Origin: Adineta vaga
Lineage: Eukaryota > Animalia > Rotifera
Reading direction: 5' to 3'
Assembly (NCBI GenBank): GCA_021613535.1
Contig: CP075492.1
Coordinates: 11,532,001-11,596,000 of the forward strand
DNA: 64,000 nucleotides
Part shown: positions 23,466 through 28,824 of the stretch, piece after piece
Layout: the number at the start of each line of letters is the position of its first letter
Position numbering within the stretch: the stretch's first letter is position 1
Notes under the pieces: generated by a model
The model's input: the letters and a program-made list of their open reading frames with translations, nothing else
What the model was told of the DNA's origin: nothing
Databases searched by the model: none
Translations under genes and position numbers: made by a program

Positions 23466-24524
23466 ATGCAAGTGGTTAAAGATCGTATTGTCAATCCTAG
23501 TCAAATTGATGATGAATATCTTTGTCCAATCTGTTATCATCTCTTATGGAAACCAGTCGAATGTCAAAATTGTCAAAGATTATTTTGTAAAGCCTGTATC
23601 GATGAATGTTTAAAGGAACAACCGGATGCATGTCCACTTTGTCGACATTATGAAGAGAAACGTTGTTCACCTATGTTCTATGCTTTATTATCAAAAATCA
23701 AAATTGAATGTGAAAATAAAGTCAATGGTTGTGAAGAAATCTTATCGTATGAATCACTTGAAAAACATCAAAATTATGGATGTCAATATAAAATGAAAAA
23801 TTGTCGTGGTTGTCAAAAGGAAATGCTAGAAAAAGATCTTAATCAACATGAACGTACTTGTGGAAAAGTTAAAATTGAATGTCAACGTTGTCATCGAACT
23901 TATAAACAAAAACGAAAACATGAACAAATGGAATGTTTAATTAATATGTTAGATACAAGTAATAAAAGATCGGAAATTTTAGAAAAAAAAGTTGCCCATC
24001 TAGAAGGCTATGTTCACGAATTAGAAACAACAATACATTTATATATTCTTGGAGGATTTAGTGCAGGTGTTGTACATGATATATCATTGTCATCATTACC
24101 ATCATCATGGAAGATAATCTATGATTTTAATTATGGTCATGAAACAACTGTAGAAGAATTACGAACGTTAAGAGCACGATGTAAAAAACAAATTATTGTT
24201 GGAGCGATCCTAGGAACTGCATCGACTGAATTGAAAATTGCAGCTATGGGCCCATCGGAAATCTTATCATTGGAAAGTCCATTGAATCAGCCGACGAAAT
24301 TTGGCAATGTTAATTGGTATTTAACACCGAATTATTCATTTGGATTTGCACCTGCATGTTCAACAATCAATTGTTATTGCGCAGATTATGGCGAAAGAGA
24401 AAATGCAGAAAATCGATTAAGTTGGCATTTGAGTGGTGATGGTGGTTATCGTGCTGGAATATTCAAAGATCTAGTTCACAATACTGAATGGAGAAAGATT
24501 ATCCTTGCAGAGACGCAGCAATAA
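23466..24524 (+). CDS. RING + TRAF-type zinc-finger protein with a coiled coil and a non-MATH C-terminal domain, intronless
   Basis: CPIC...CQNCQRLFCKACI...CPLC RING; CENKVNGC...H..C and CRGC...H...C TRAF-like fingers; C-terminal WYLTPNYSFGFAP...NRLSWHLSGDGGYRAG domain. Confidence 0.85.
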   Translation: MQVVKDRIVNPSQIDDEYLCPICYHLLWKPVECQNCQRLFCKACIDECLKEQPDACPLCRHYEEKRCSPMFYALLSKIKIECENKVNGCEEILSYESLEKHQNYGCQYKMKNCRGCQKEMLEKDLNQHERTCGKVKIECQRCHRTYKQKRKHEQMECLINMLDTSNKRSEILEKKVAHLEGYVHELETTIHLYILGGFSAGVVHDISLSSLPSSWKIIYDFNYGHETTVEELRTLRARCKKQIIVGAILGTASTELKIAAMGPSEILSLESPLNQPTKFGNVNWYLTPNYSFGFAPACSTINCYCADYGERENAENRLSWHLSGDGGYRAGIFKDLVHNTEWRKIILAETQQ

Positions 24525-25722: not shown

Positions 25723-28700
25723 TTATTCTTCATTATCATGATTGTCATTTGAATACGATTCTTGTTCGTGATAACGTGTTCGGAATGGTTTTATAGGAAT
25801 TGTTGATATTGTCGTACTTTTCGCTTGATTATTTCGATCGAATCGTCTCGTTGTATATATTTCTCGTTGTTTGGAAACGGAATCTTTCCATTGAACCGTT
25901 GGTCGGTATCTTCTAGGTGGATCTAATAATTGAGGAAATGGCATTTCTTTATTGATTGGTTCGATACGTTGACGTAACAATTCGAGAAGTGCTCGTCTAT
26001 AGTTTCCCTTTGTATCTGTCTAAAATGAGAAGAAGAAGAATGACGATGATCTTTACACAATGAACAAACCTGAATATGATCAAAGAGTGTTCGATGAGTT
26101 ATCTTTTCAAATTCTGCTTTGATTTGTAACATATCAATTTCCGAACGAGAAACGATAATACGTGTTAAATTATCTTCATTAGTACTTGATCCCTTGGAAA
26201 ATGAATCGAGAAGCGAAAAGATAAAGTTAATATGATGAAATATAATCTTACTTTGAGACTTTTCTTTAATTCATAAGCAAAAAAACGTACTGAATTTCGT
26301 ATAATTCGAACTAGAAAAGATTTCCAAGTCTTTTCTCAGGAATAGAAAAACAAGTTTGAACATACCAATAGCCATTAATGTTCGACTAAGATCAGGATTT
26401 GCACTAGTTTTAATCGAATCTTCAATATCAACGTTTGAATATCGATGATAAACGGCAAACGTTTGTTTTAAATGTGCATTACTAGAAGAAAACAGCATAG
26501 TTATAGAAATTATACAATGAAATCATTTTAAAACCTTCGATTGCATAACAATCGAATAAATGTTGATCCATCTGTTCGCCATTTTGATTGTGATTCAGCT
26601 AAATTTTTCGCATCGTCACAAACTTCATCCTCATCAACTGTATCATCTTCTGGACGATTTGCTTGAAGTAATGCAAGGAAAATTTTTATCGATGGTGTAT
26701 TACGATTCTTCATAATATCTTGCTCAACCGTACTTTCGAATACTATTCAAATAGATTAAATTTTAAAAACAGAAAGAAGCTTTTGAATTTGACCTTACAT
26801 TTGTTATAATAATCGAGAATATGTTTGATTTGTTTATTGGTACTTGTAAGAAATATTTCGATGAGAATATTTTCATCCAGATTCGCATTTTTAAATATTC
26901 GTCGTAATTCATAGCAATTACGTTCAATTGGTGATAATAAAAGAATTTTCAAGATTTTCTTCGAATCATCAGTGATATTCGTGTCAATAACATTGATTAA
27001 ACCCTATTATAGAAATTGAATTGCAATTTTAGTTGGTTTTTATTTTTTACAAGAAAGATAGGATTTACTTTATTGAAAAGATTTTTGTATATATCACGAA
27101 TTCGAATACGTTGAGCAACAGTTCGATTACAAAGTATTCTTATAATAGCTGTTTCATCGATATGCATTTGATCGAAAATATGGTTCAATCGTTTACAATC
27201 TAAATAGAGAAGAATATAAGACAAAATTTTACTTTTTTATTTTTTAATTTTGTTAAATACCTTGTTCGACATCAAAATCAGTAAATCGAGTTATTGTTCC
27301 TTCGAATGATATCGAATCTTTTGTTTTATGAATGTCTTGTAATGACGGAGATTTTACTTGAATAAATGTTGATGAATGATAATTTGATCTTTTAATATCA
27401 TGTTCTGATGATGAACGAAGAATTGATTTACGCTTTGTTGTAGATGAATTTTCTAGTGTTCTTTTTGAATATCGATTTAATTCTTCTCGATATATTTCAA
27501 TTCGTTGTTTCAATTCTGTACGAATACGAATAGCATCATCGTGTTGTTTCTCTCTTTCTCGAATAATTTGTTCGAGCATTGCTAAATGTCGTTGAGTACT
27601 TAATTTTGCTTGACTATCAGTGTTTCTTTCTGTAATTTGTTTTTCAAAAGTTTGAATTTGAATTTGAACTTCGTGAATCGAACCACTAACAGCACTAATC
27701 TGTTGTTCAACAATTTTTCTTTCATGCTTTAATTGATCTATTTTTTGTTCATGTTCTCGTGTAACATTTGGAATAGGACGATGTTTATGCATGTGATAAC
27801 GATGTAATTCTAATTCATATTGTCGATGTAATTCATCTCGATATGTTTGAATTTTTCTTTCATAGTCCACACGACTACGACGAATTTCATGAGTTAATTG
27901 TTCACGAAAATATGTTAATGGTTGACTTGTTGCTATTAGTTTCATATCAATGGATCCTCGAATATCATCAACTTTTATTGAATGTACATCTTCATTAGAA
28001 ATCTTTTCACTTTCTAATACTTCGACTTCGGTTTTTAAAACTTGTTTAGCAAAGATTTCTTCATCGACTTCATAATGTAATTTCGTTTTCCGTAGTTGTA
28101 ATGATTCATTTTTTAATGTATAAAATTGTATTTCATCATTGAATTGTTGGATACGACAACGAAGAAATTCCGATTCAGCTCGTGTCTGTGCTAATTGACG
28201 ATGATATTCAAAAATGTCTCGATTTGTTGTATTTCGTCTGGATAATAATTGTTGATAATGTTCATCATTAGCAATAGTTGTTTGATGAATATCATGAAGT
28301 TTTTTTTCCATATCAGGTTTAGATCGTGTTGCATCTTCAATTAATTGTTGTGCTGTTTGAATTTCTTGACGAAACATTCTATCAATTGTTAAAGAATTTT
28401 TATTCGCATTATTTTGTAACCATTCAATCTGCAATTCTAACGCCCGATTATGAACATCAAAATGACAACATTGTAAAATACATTCAGTTAATGTTTCAGT
28501 TAGTTTTGATAATTCACGTTCTTCATCAATAGAAGATTCTCCATCGATACTTTGAATGCAAGATATTTGTGAATGGGAAGAAGTTCCAATTATTGAAGCA
28601 AGACCATGACCTGTTGATATTGGTGCTGGTTTTATCGTTGGACCAATTGCTGATAAAACAAAATTGCGTAATGAACCTGCATAACTATTGGCGACATTGA

Positions 28701-28824
28701 TACCAACAGTACGAGAAGCAATATATTTCATGGCTGTTGTTGATCTATGAGGTGCAGCTGTTGTTGGACGACCAACTTCAGCAACATCATATTTATTCTC
28801 ATTAAATTTCACGATTTGATTCAT
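25723..28824 (-). CDS. Intermediate-filament rod / annexin core fusion protein, multi-exon
   Basis: Exon 1 (28824-27261) has an IF-like rod (ELSKLTETLTECILQCCHFDVHNRALE ... ELKQRIEIYREELNRY) and ends GTITRFTDFDVEQ. It splices in frame (intron 27260-27200) to DCKRL...IDETAIIRILCNRTVAQR, then three more annexin repeats ending TDTKGNYRRALLELL, then a ~80-aa tail. Confidence 0.85.

What the first reader, a model, noticed from the sequence alone, without database searches (positions are those of the whole stretch)
25723..28824. Intermediate filament-annexin fusion protein with degenerate Ca2+ sites
Seen: one 1.56-kb exon encodes a low-complexity head and an IF-like rod, with coil-1A start ERELSKLTETLTECILQCCHFDVHNRALELQI and coil-2 end ELKQRIEIYREELNRY. 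The same exon continues into the annexin N-terminal signature GTITRFTDFDVEQ and splices in frame to four annexin repeats (IDETAIIRILCNRTVAQR; LDENILIEIFLTSTNKQI; TDGSTFIRLLCNRSNAHL; TNEDNLTRIIVSRSEIDML...DTKGNYRRALL). Because the junction lies inside an exon, the fusion is not a gene-model artefact. The GxGTDE loops read QMHIDE, NANLDE, KWRTDG and GSSTNE. Knowledge: IF rods form coiled-coil filaments, annexin cores bind phospholipid membranes, and the two are normally separate proteins. Inference: a direct, probably Ca2+-independent filament-to-membrane linker, for example for the syncytial integument lamina or for membrane stabilisation during desiccation. I cannot tell whether this architecture has already been reported.
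Basis: partly seen in the sequence, partly recalled or inferred. Interest (0 to 1): 0.85.

Follow-up and report, generated by a model that had tools for sequence, protein, structure and literature searches.

The report
Intermediate filament fused to annexin
A rotifer (Adineta vaga) gene joins the head and rod of a cytoskeletal intermediate-filament protein to a complete annexin domain that has lost its usual calcium sites; the combination is conserved across bdelloid rotifers, sits unnamed in public databases, and has an untested function.

Summary
On the minus strand, 28824..25723, lies an 8-exon gene (all introns GT-AG, 50-65 nt; 900 codons). It matches the public Adineta vaga model I4U23_014466 except for the start codon. 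Exon 1 (1564 nt) encodes a head, a 354-residue rod, a linker and the first 16 residues of annexin homology. The fusion point is therefore inside one exon.

The rod scores below Pfam's Filament cut-off (28-37 bits against 40). It is still a true IF homologue: profile-profile probability is 99.9% over 409 columns against 35 bona fide IFs, rod length is gap-free in 14 relatives, coil 1B is of the long lamin type, and the family nests inside rotifer IFs.

The annexin core is confident (E about 1e-55 to annexin A5/A4; predicted fold TM 0.9). The K-G-x-G-T plus acidic-cap calcium sites are absent in repeats 1-3 in all 14 relatives and only partly kept in repeat 4.

The family has one origin and two old paralogue clades, present in both Adineta and Rotaria. 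A. vaga carries the second copy on another chromosome, and this scan had already noted a copy on other DNA of this genome. One intron-free 3-kb contig supports a single fused mRNA, but only for the sister clade.

Function as a filament-to-membrane linker remains inference. I found no paper on it.

The parts
25723..28824 (-). Whole coding region of the IF-annexin gene: 8 exons, 2703 nt, 900 aa plus stop
   Evidence: Each exon translation is found in order in public protein P0001 (A. vaga I4U23_014466). All introns are GT-AG and 50-65 nt long.
27261..28824 (-). Exon 1 (1564 nt): head, rod, linker and the first 16 residues of annexin homology
28528..28824 (-). Head domain (aa 1-99 counted from the ATG at 28824), predicted disordered, with conserved motifs RPTTA, KYIxxR, GLAS and SIDGE
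   Evidence: The head aligns with canonical rotifer IF heads (YxSxIxPR). Orthologues conserve the 31 aa upstream of the public model's start.
27466..28527 (-). IF-type rod, 354 aa (P0001 residues 69-422). Predicted helices 66-108, 111-260, 272-316 and 325-424 in P0001 numbering
   Evidence: hhalign 99.94%, E 1.4e-36 against bona fide IFs. Gap-free 352-354 aligned residues in 13 relatives. AF2 secondary structure. Tree.
27313..27465 (-). Variable Ser/Thr-rich linker (about 51 aa) between the rod end and the annexin core
   Evidence: Mean pairwise column identity 0.26; pLDDT below 50.
27261..27309 (-). Start of annexin homology (SFEGTITRFTDFDVEQ) still inside exon 1
   Evidence: phmmer alignment to annexin VI/V begins here.
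27200..27260 (-). Intron 1 (61 nt, phase 1). It contains the in-frame stop at 27253-27255 that ends the raw ORF.
   Evidence: An intron at the same position and phase precedes 'DC...' in the chromosome-6 paralogue.
25972..27199 (-). Rest of the four-repeat annexin core. Exons 2-8: 27199..27069, 27003..26799, 26742..26535, 26481..26366, 26310..26252, 26192..26070, 26019..25972
   Evidence: Pfam Annexin 172 bits, 4 stretches. PDB annexins E 1e-55 to 1e-100. AF2 pLDDT above 90; Foldseek TM 0.88-0.92 to annexin A4/A11/A5.
27153..27176 (-). Repeat 1 AB loop FDQMHIDE (in place of MKGxGTDE); cap position is N
26872..26895 (-). Repeat 2 AB loop FKNANLDE; cap position is N
26564..26587 (-). Repeat 3 AB loop SKWRTDGS. 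Trp is invariant in 14 of 14, followed by a basic residue (R, K or H) in 13 of 14 and Q in one; cap position is S
26175..26192 (-). Repeat 4 AB loop (LK, encoded at 26257..26252, then GSSTNE here). The acidic cap D is kept, so this is the least degenerate site
25726..25971 (-). C-terminal extension of about 82 aa after the annexin core, predicted disordered, with conserved islands VQW and FDxNNxxK

Best explanation
Shown: this is one Adineta vaga gene whose product (900 aa) is a divergent cytoplasmic intermediate-filament protein. Its usual tail has been replaced by a complete four-repeat annexin core plus a disordered 82-aa extension. The fusion arose once, on the branch leading to a bdelloid-specific IF lineage whose closest unfused relative is a Didymodactylos carnosus IF. 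It then duplicated into two clades, both kept in Adineta and Rotaria. The annexin core is under stronger constraint than the rod. Its type II Ca2+ sites were already lost before the duplication. Inferred mechanism: the 354-aa rod forms a parallel, in-register coiled-coil dimer, as IF rods do, so two annexin cores sit side by side on flexible ~50-aa linkers at one end. Higher-order assembly, alone or with the clade-B paralogue, would give a scaffold studded with annexin cores. These would dock without Ca2+ onto a membrane surface or cortical partner. My odds for each step: single fused protein 0.95; true IF homologue 0.95; dimer or filament formation 0.6; Ca2+-independent membrane docking 0.35. 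A conserved Cys at a predicted core 'a' position of coil 1A (ILQCC) could allow an inter-chain disulfide; this is inference only.
For: Gene model and junction inside exon 1. Independent public gene models carry Filament plus Annexin on file for A. vaga, A. ricciae, A. steineri, Rotaria sp. Silwood2 and R. socialis. The colinear R. sordida, R. sp. Silwood1 and R. magnacalcarata models carry Annexin only on file. An intron-free 3021-nt contig (L009) with one 958-aa ORF spans head, rod, linker, four annexin repeats and tail. Its genomic relatives are split into exons. IF homology: phmmer reaches bona fide IFs at E 5e-19 over rod-length colinear alignments; all 35 such hits carry Filament above threshold; hhalign 99.94% over 409 columns; the only PDB profile hits are lamin A/C; rod length is invariant; helix breaks fall where L1 and L12 are expected and coil 1B is 150 aa. 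Monophyly and the two clades: (SH-aLRT 100, 98 and 97). A. vaga paralogue on contig 6. Annexin fold. Ca2+-site loss across the family and relaxed loops.
Against: Pfam Filament is below its gathering score in every member tested. The two hallmark IF end motifs are only partly kept (LNDRFA becomes LTETLT; YRKLLEGEE becomes YREELNRY), so canonical 10-nm assembly is uncertain. The former membrane-binding loops are the least conserved part of the annexin core and are not notably basic. This weakens the membrane-docking step.
Confidence: 0.5

Rival explanations
1. The fused protein is the same, but the annexin core no longer touches membranes. It serves as a globular tail that binds proteins or other annexin cores, taking the place of the lamin-tail Ig fold of other invertebrate IFs. 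In that role it would control lateral packing or bundling of filaments.
For: Ca2+-coordinating positions are relaxed (0.36 and 0.30 against 0.61 for the rest of the core). The rest of the core is the best-conserved part of the protein. The annexin sits exactly where IF tails sit, and 6 of 35 related IFs carry an LTD there.
Against: The invariant Trp in the repeat 3 loop, usually followed by a basic residue, corresponds to the membrane-inserting Trp of annexin A5 (my knowledge; alignment). It is kept in 14 of 14 members. No partner is known.
Confidence: 0.3
2. It is a lamin-like protein of the nuclear lamina. The annexin core would replace the farnesyl (CaaX) membrane anchor that all rotifer lamins lack.
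For: Rotifer lamins lack CaaX (PMC10125929). The rod has the long lamin-type coil 1B. A. vaga has TKRKS shortly after the rod end, where lamins carry their NLS.
Against: The basic motif is not conserved in A. ricciae, Rotaria or clade B. There is no LTD and no CaaX. The nearest relatives are cytoplasmic-type rotifer IFs without an LTD.
Confidence: 0.05
3. Gene-model artefact: an IF-like gene ends at the stop in intron 1 (27253) and a separate annexin gene follows.
For: The raw ORF stops at 27253. No reads were laid on this gene.
Against: Annexin homology begins 16 residues before the junction, inside exon 1. Exon 2 has no start codon before helix A of repeat 1. The phase-1 intron is conserved in the paralogue. 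All species' models fuse the two parts. A spliced 958-aa contig exists for the sister clade. An earlier follow-up of this scan reported one mRNA for a copy on other DNA of this genome (not re-tested here).
Confidence: 0.03
4. The N-terminal part is a generic coiled coil with only compositional resemblance to IFs.
For: Pfam Filament is below its cut-off. The hallmark motifs are degraded.
Against: The alignment is end-to-end, colinear and length-preserving, including the head motif. All 35 distant hits are IFs, not myosins or tropomyosins. PDB profile hits are lamin only. The sister protein in D. carnosus passes the Filament threshold at 64 bits.
Confidence: 0.03

Closest known systems
Invertebrate cytoplasmic intermediate-filament proteins and lamins (Pfam PF00038 Filament). 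Nearest: Didymodactylos carnosus 'IF rod domain-containing protein' P0054 and Rotaria IFs P0060/P0066/P0067
   Same: Disordered head with a shared motif. A 354-aa rod with the long, lamin-type coil 1B, and helix breaks where L1 and L12 are expected. Colinear profile match.
   Different: The tail is replaced by an annexin core. The coil 1A and coil 2B end motifs are only partly kept. Pfam score is below the gathering cut-off. A long stem branch (1.27 + 0.76 substitutions per site) separates it from canonical IFs. No LTD, no CaaX, no conserved NLS.
Annexins (Pfam PF00191). Nearest solved structures: annexin A4, A5, A11, A13, A2 and A6 (32-37% identity)
   Same: Four-repeat core aligned end to end from the conserved N-terminal G-T-x-x-x-F-x-x-F segment to the last helix. 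Predicted fold TM about 0.9.
   Different: The N-terminal 'variable domain' is a 500-aa IF head and rod. The type II Ca2+ motif is absent in repeats 1-3 and partial in repeat 4. There is an extra 82-aa disordered C-terminal extension. No close free-standing annexin relative was found (best 35%).
Annexins without type II Ca2+ sites, such as vertebrate annexin A9 and A10 (from my knowledge, not tested here)
   Same: An annexin core kept by selection after loss of the canonical Ca2+ loops.
   Different: Those are free-standing proteins with short N-termini. Here the core is welded to a filament-type rod.
Farnesylated lamins (CaaX anchor), as IF proteins with a built-in membrane anchor (PMC10125929)
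   Same: Concept only: an IF-family protein carrying its own candidate membrane-attachment device at the C-terminal end.
   Different: A lipid modification against a folded lipid-binding-type domain. Lamins are nuclear, while this protein shows no conserved NLS.
Other annexin fusions in the same genome: the DZANK1-like head fused to eight annexin repeats (earlier finding s1-484521)
   Same: An annexin core used as the C-terminal module of a composite bdelloid protein.
   Different: A different head, and an eight-repeat annexin described there as a calcium/membrane-binding type. Not examined here.

Membership tests
Intermediate filament proteins (PF00038) | Score above the curated Pfam gathering threshold (40 bits) | tested here: not met
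   28.6-30.6 bits for this protein and 16.8-36.9 bits in five of the six orthologue models scanned (R. sordida P0013 had no Filament match at E <= 0.01). Matches start at profile position 2, and one spans 2-304 of 313.
Intermediate filament proteins (PF00038) | Homology of the whole rod to bona fide IF rods | tested here: met
   hhalign probability 99.94%, E 1.4e-36, 409 columns. phmmer E down to 5e-19 to proteins that all pass the Filament threshold. Nested in the IF tree with SH-aLRT 100.
Intermediate filament proteins (PF00038) | Strictly conserved rod length (about 310 aa, or about 352-356 aa with the 42-aa coil 1B insert) | tested here: met
   354 aa, with 352-354 residues aligned without gaps in 13 relatives. 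Colinear with the 354-aa rods of rotifer IFs.
Intermediate filament proteins (PF00038) | Sub-domain plan coil 1A - L1 - coil 1B - L12 - coil 2 | tested here: met
   AF2 helices 66-108, 111-260 and 272-316/325-424, with breaks at 109-110 and 261-271. The extra Pro-containing break at 317-324 aligns with a Pro-containing stretch in the canonical rotifer IF P0060.
Intermediate filament proteins (PF00038) | Consensus end motifs (coil 1A LNDRFAxYIxKVRxLE; coil 2B TYRKLLEGEE) | tested here: inconclusive
   The heptad pattern, the core Asn and Y-R are kept. LNDR becomes LTET and LLEGEE becomes ELNRYS.
Intermediate filament proteins (PF00038) | Self-assembly into about 10-nm filaments | not testable with these tools
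   Needs in vitro assembly and electron microscopy.
Annexins (PF00191) | Four homologous repeats of about 70 aa forming the annexin core fold | tested here: met
   Pfam 172 bits, 4 stretches. E 1e-55 to annexin A5/A4. AF2 pLDDT above 90 and Foldseek TM 0.88-0.92.
Annexins (PF00191) | Type II Ca2+ sites: K-G-x-G-T in the AB loop plus an acidic residue 39 positions after the T | tested here: not met
   Absent in repeats 1-3 of all 14 family members. Repeat 4 has K-G-S-S-T plus D here, and is intact only in A. ricciae.
Annexins (PF00191) | Ca2+-dependent binding to acidic phospholipids | not testable with these tools
   Needs liposome binding assays with and without Ca2+.
Nuclear lamins | NLS after the rod, lamin tail Ig domain (PF00932), C-terminal CaaX | tested here: not met
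   No LTD match. The C-terminus is ...HDNEE. The KRK motif is present only in A. vaga and A. steineri, and absent in A. ricciae, Rotaria and clade B.

The most novel reading that the evidence does not exclude
Bdelloid rotifers build a membrane-apposed cortical lattice from two co-retained IF-annexin paralogues, possibly as obligate A/B heteropolymers like keratins. The annexin cores would hold the filament directly on the bilayer without Ca2+. That would be the first intermediate-filament system with an intrinsic folded lipid-binding module.
Probability: 0.2. Interest if true: 0.8.

Novelty: new variant of a known kind. Interest (0 to 1): 0.55.

Why it matters
IF proteins normally reach membranes through adaptors (plakins, desmosomal and hemidesmosomal proteins) or, for lamins, a lipid tail. 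Annexins normally carry short regulatory N-termini. A conserved natural weld of the two, kept in two paralogue clades since before the Adineta-Rotaria split, would be a compact model for several questions. It could show how filaments can be tethered directly to a surface. It could show what an annexin core does once its Ca2+ sites are gone. It could show how far an IF rod can diverge (sub-threshold in Pfam) while keeping its length and plan. It also shows that default Pfam thresholds can miss part of this architecture. The value is limited for now because function, localisation and assembly are all untested.

Tried and rejected
A local script only printed the GT donor dinucleotide at 27260-27259. 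The runs listed as possibly RNA hold 38-47% of the words, but this was not examined further.

Exons were used by reference. For whole-protein work I used the public protein P0001, which the homology search returned.

(3) The lamin reading was rejected: no LTD, no CaaX, no conserved NLS.

(4) I asked whether the closest unfused relative (D. carnosus P0054) has hidden annexin exons downstream. tblastn on its locus found none, and the gene is a single exon followed by a TPR gene.

(5) I looked for the architecture outside bdelloids. The long-protein search with the annexin part gave only bdelloid IF-annexin proteins plus an unrelated fish fusion. None of the 35 distant IF hits has an annexin. This is not proof of absence, because monogonont, seisonid and acanthocephalan genomes were not searched at DNA level.

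(6) Seven full-text literature searches found nothing on this architecture.

(7) A search for the accession of the run behind the mRNA-like contig found no paper, so its library type is unverified.
Full report
WHAT IS THERE. The window is AT-rich eukaryotic DNA (about 30% G+C). The exon 1 ORF is 100% identical to 'hypothetical protein I4U23_014466 [Adineta vaga]' (P0001, 869 aa). The window is contig 3, 11532001-11596000, of a six-contig 100.8-Mb assembly.

On the minus strand I read eight exons:
- 28824..27261
- 27199..27069
- 27003..26799
- 26742..26535
- 26481..26366
- 26310..26252
- 26192..26070
- 26019..25723

All introns are GT-AG and 50-65 nt long. The total is 2703 nt, or 900 codons plus stop. 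Each exon's translation occurs in order in P0001.

The public model starts at the second Met. The 31 residues upstream, including GRPTTAAPH, are conserved in the orthologues. The ATG at 28824 is therefore the likelier start.

I did not build or search a joined spliced model. Exons were handled by reference, and P0001, a protein returned by the search tool, served for whole-protein work.

IS THE FUSION REAL. Exon 1 alone encodes the head, the whole rod, a linker and then SFEGTITRFTDFDVEQ. phmmer against solved structures aligns the annexin part end to end with annexins A6, A5, A4, A2 and others (E 2e-100 for the two-core A6; about 1e-55 for A5/A4). The alignment begins at that SFEGT segment, 16 residues before the exon 1/2 junction.

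Exon 2 starts in phase 1 with no upstream Met. Public gene models of A. ricciae (901 aa), A. steineri (903 aa), Rotaria sp. Silwood1 (915), R. sordida (912), R. sp. Silwood2 (916), R. socialis (962) and R. magnacalcarata (977) are colinear with this gene over both parts. Most carry both Pfam families on file. The Silwood1, R. sordida and R. magnacalcarata models carry Annexin only on file.

A 3021-nt Logan contig (L009, run SRR5248432) holds one uninterrupted 958-aa ORF. It is 41% identical to P0001 from head to C-terminal tail. The same protein maps as separate blocks on genomic relatives. The simplest reading is a spliced mRNA of the sister clade, although the library type was not verified.

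A local script only printed the donor dinucleotide.

An earlier follow-up of this scan (s1-498381) reported one mRNA for an IF-annexin gene on another piece of this genome. That is probably the chromosome-6 paralogue. I did not re-test that claim.

IS THE N-TERMINAL PART AN INTERMEDIATE FILAMENT. By Pfam's own cut-off it is not. Filament scores 28.6-30.6 bits here and 16.8-36.9 bits in five of the six orthologue models scanned, against a threshold of 40; the R. sordida model gave no match at E <= 0.01. The matches are nevertheless anchored at profile position 2, and in one orthologue span 2-304 of 313.

Stronger tests agree on homology:
- An exhaustive phmmer search of 1.84 billion representatives found 69 proteins. 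Beyond the family itself these are about 20% identical proteins, aligned colinearly over the rod (query 99-452 to 110-463 in P0060, E 5e-19).
- All 35 of those I scanned carry Filament above threshold, and six also carry the lamin tail domain.
- A profile of 34 family rods against a profile of those 35 IFs gives hhalign probability 99.94%, E 1.4e-36, over 409 columns. The match runs from the head motif (KYIxPR against YRSxIxPR) through coil 1A to the Y-R at the end of coil 2B.
- The family profile hits only lamin A/C in the PDB, and weakly.
- Rod length is invariant: 352-354 of 354 positions aligned without gaps in 13 full-length relatives.
- AF2 on the family alignment gives a disordered head. 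Helices fall at 66-108, 111-260, 272-316 and 325-424, with breaks where L1 and L12 are expected. The 150-aa coil 1B is the long, lamin/protostome type.

What is not canonical is the state of the two end motifs. LNDRFAxYIxKVRxLE reads LTETLTECILQCCHFD, and YRKLLEGEE reads YREELNRYS. These motifs matter for longitudinal assembly (established IF knowledge, also stated in PMC10125929), so filament formation is uncertain.

EVOLUTION. A maximum-likelihood tree of 49 head-plus-rod sequences puts all 25 fusion-family rows in one clade (SH-aLRT 100). The clade is sister to the unfused Didymodactylos carnosus IF P0054 (Filament 64 bits, 31% identical). It sits on a long stem inside the canonical IFs.

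P0054 is a single-exon gene with no annexin exons downstream.

Inside the family there are two clades, A (98) and B (97), each with Adineta and Rotaria members. Six species show both.

A. vaga's clade-B copy lies on contig 6 (L002; rod 43% identical). It has the same phase-1 intron before 'DC...', plus one extra intron upstream of the annexin N-terminal motif.

Two environmental contigs with more divergent clade-B rods also carry annexin exons just downstream on the same strand (L010, L011).

Outside bdelloids I found no IF-annexin protein.

THE ANNEXIN PART. AF2 gives pLDDT above 90 over about 305 residues, and Foldseek gives TM 0.88-0.92 to annexin A4, A11, A5 and A2.

The type II site (K-G-x-G-T, then an acidic residue 39 positions after the T) is missing in repeats 1-3 of all 14 full-length members. 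Repeat 4 reads L-K-G-S-S-T-N-E with the cap Asp kept, and is intact (L-K-G-L-G-T-N-E plus D) only in A. ricciae. The loss therefore predates the A/B duplication. Residual weak binding at repeat 4 cannot be excluded.

The core is the best-conserved region, with mean pairwise column identity 0.59 against 0.51 for the rod. The former Ca2+ positions are the least conserved within it: 0.36 for the loops and 0.30 for the caps, against 0.61 for the rest. The exceptions are an invariant Trp, followed by a basic residue in 13 of 14 members, in the repeat 3 loop, and the Lys of repeat 4.

After the core comes an 82-aa extension. It is predicted disordered, with small conserved islands VQW and FDxNNxxK.

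HOW IT MOST LIKELY WORKS. Shown: the architecture, its conservation, and the loss of the Ca2+ sites.

Inferred from IF knowledge: a parallel in-register dimer that puts two annexin cores side by side on flexible ~50-aa linkers. Possible higher-order assembly, perhaps of A with B, would give a scaffold decorated with annexin cores.

Whether those cores dock on lipid without Ca2+ (my odds 0.35) or on proteins (0.3) is open. The relaxed loops argue against a classical membrane face. The conserved Trp and the mostly basic residue after it argue that something of that face is kept.

A conserved Cys at the position of the coil 1A core Val (ILQCC against KVRFLE) could give an inter-chain disulfide. 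This is inference only.

The family appears bdelloid-restricted, while the syncytial lamina is common to all Syndermata. It is also kept in Rotaria socialis and R. magnacalcarata, which I know as non-desiccating species (my knowledge, not tested here).

A lamina-anchor reading is unlikely, even though all rotifer lamins lack CaaX (PMC10125929). There is no conserved NLS, no LTD and no CaaX.

NOVELTY. The architecture exists in public databases as unnamed or 'Annexin' predictions, and the scan had already met a copy on other DNA of this genome. Seven full-text searches found no description, though that library is incomplete.

I rate it a new variant of known kinds: a known IF scaffold with a known annexin core in a combination that appears undescribed, with its function unknown.

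Noticed in passing
window 28732-28824 (-): The public model P0001 starts at the second Met (MKYIASR...). The 31 codons upstream, from the ATG at 28824, include GRPTTAAPH, which is conserved in Adineta and Rotaria orthologues. The deposited protein is therefore probably truncated by 31 aa at its N-terminus.
   Followed up: partly
L002 (G000 contig 6, 3593547-3597899), minus strand: This is the clade-B paralogue of the IF-annexin gene in the same genome (rod 43% identical). Unlike the window's gene, it has an extra intron and a 37-nt micro-exon (DANLTRNSSVEH) between the linker and the annexin core. In that copy the junction is not inside one exon.
   Followed up: partly
P0086 (Pomphorhynchus laevis KAI0978311.1, 859 aa): An acanthocephalan IF protein (Filament 165 bits) has a borderline C2-domain match at its C-terminal end (22.7 bits against a cut-off of 22). 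This may be a second case in Syndermata of an IF joined to a Ca2+/lipid-binding-type module. It is a gene prediction only.
   Followed up: no
P0045 / P0108 (Adineta steineri, 1356 and 1552 aa): Some public clade-B models continue from the annexin core into a long leucine-rich-repeat region, while sister models of the same cluster stop at 977 aa. This is probably a merge with the neighbouring gene.
   Followed up: no
L010 7545-9876 and L011 8738-11070: In both environmental clade-B loci a dynein heavy-chain gene lies convergently just downstream of the IF-annexin gene. This is conserved synteny that the window's clade-A locus does not show; there the downstream ORF is a RING/TRAF-type zinc-finger ORF at 23466-24524 (+).
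   Followed up: partly
P0014, P0015, P0019 (606 aa, environmental contigs): In these clade-A relatives intron 1 is 45 nt, in frame and free of stops. Prokaryote-style gene callers therefore read straight from the rod into annexin repeat 1, with 15 extra residues (GSLPHSAFTEPFDHL) at the junction.
   Followed up: no
It is an A/T-rich run of the intron.
   Followed up: no
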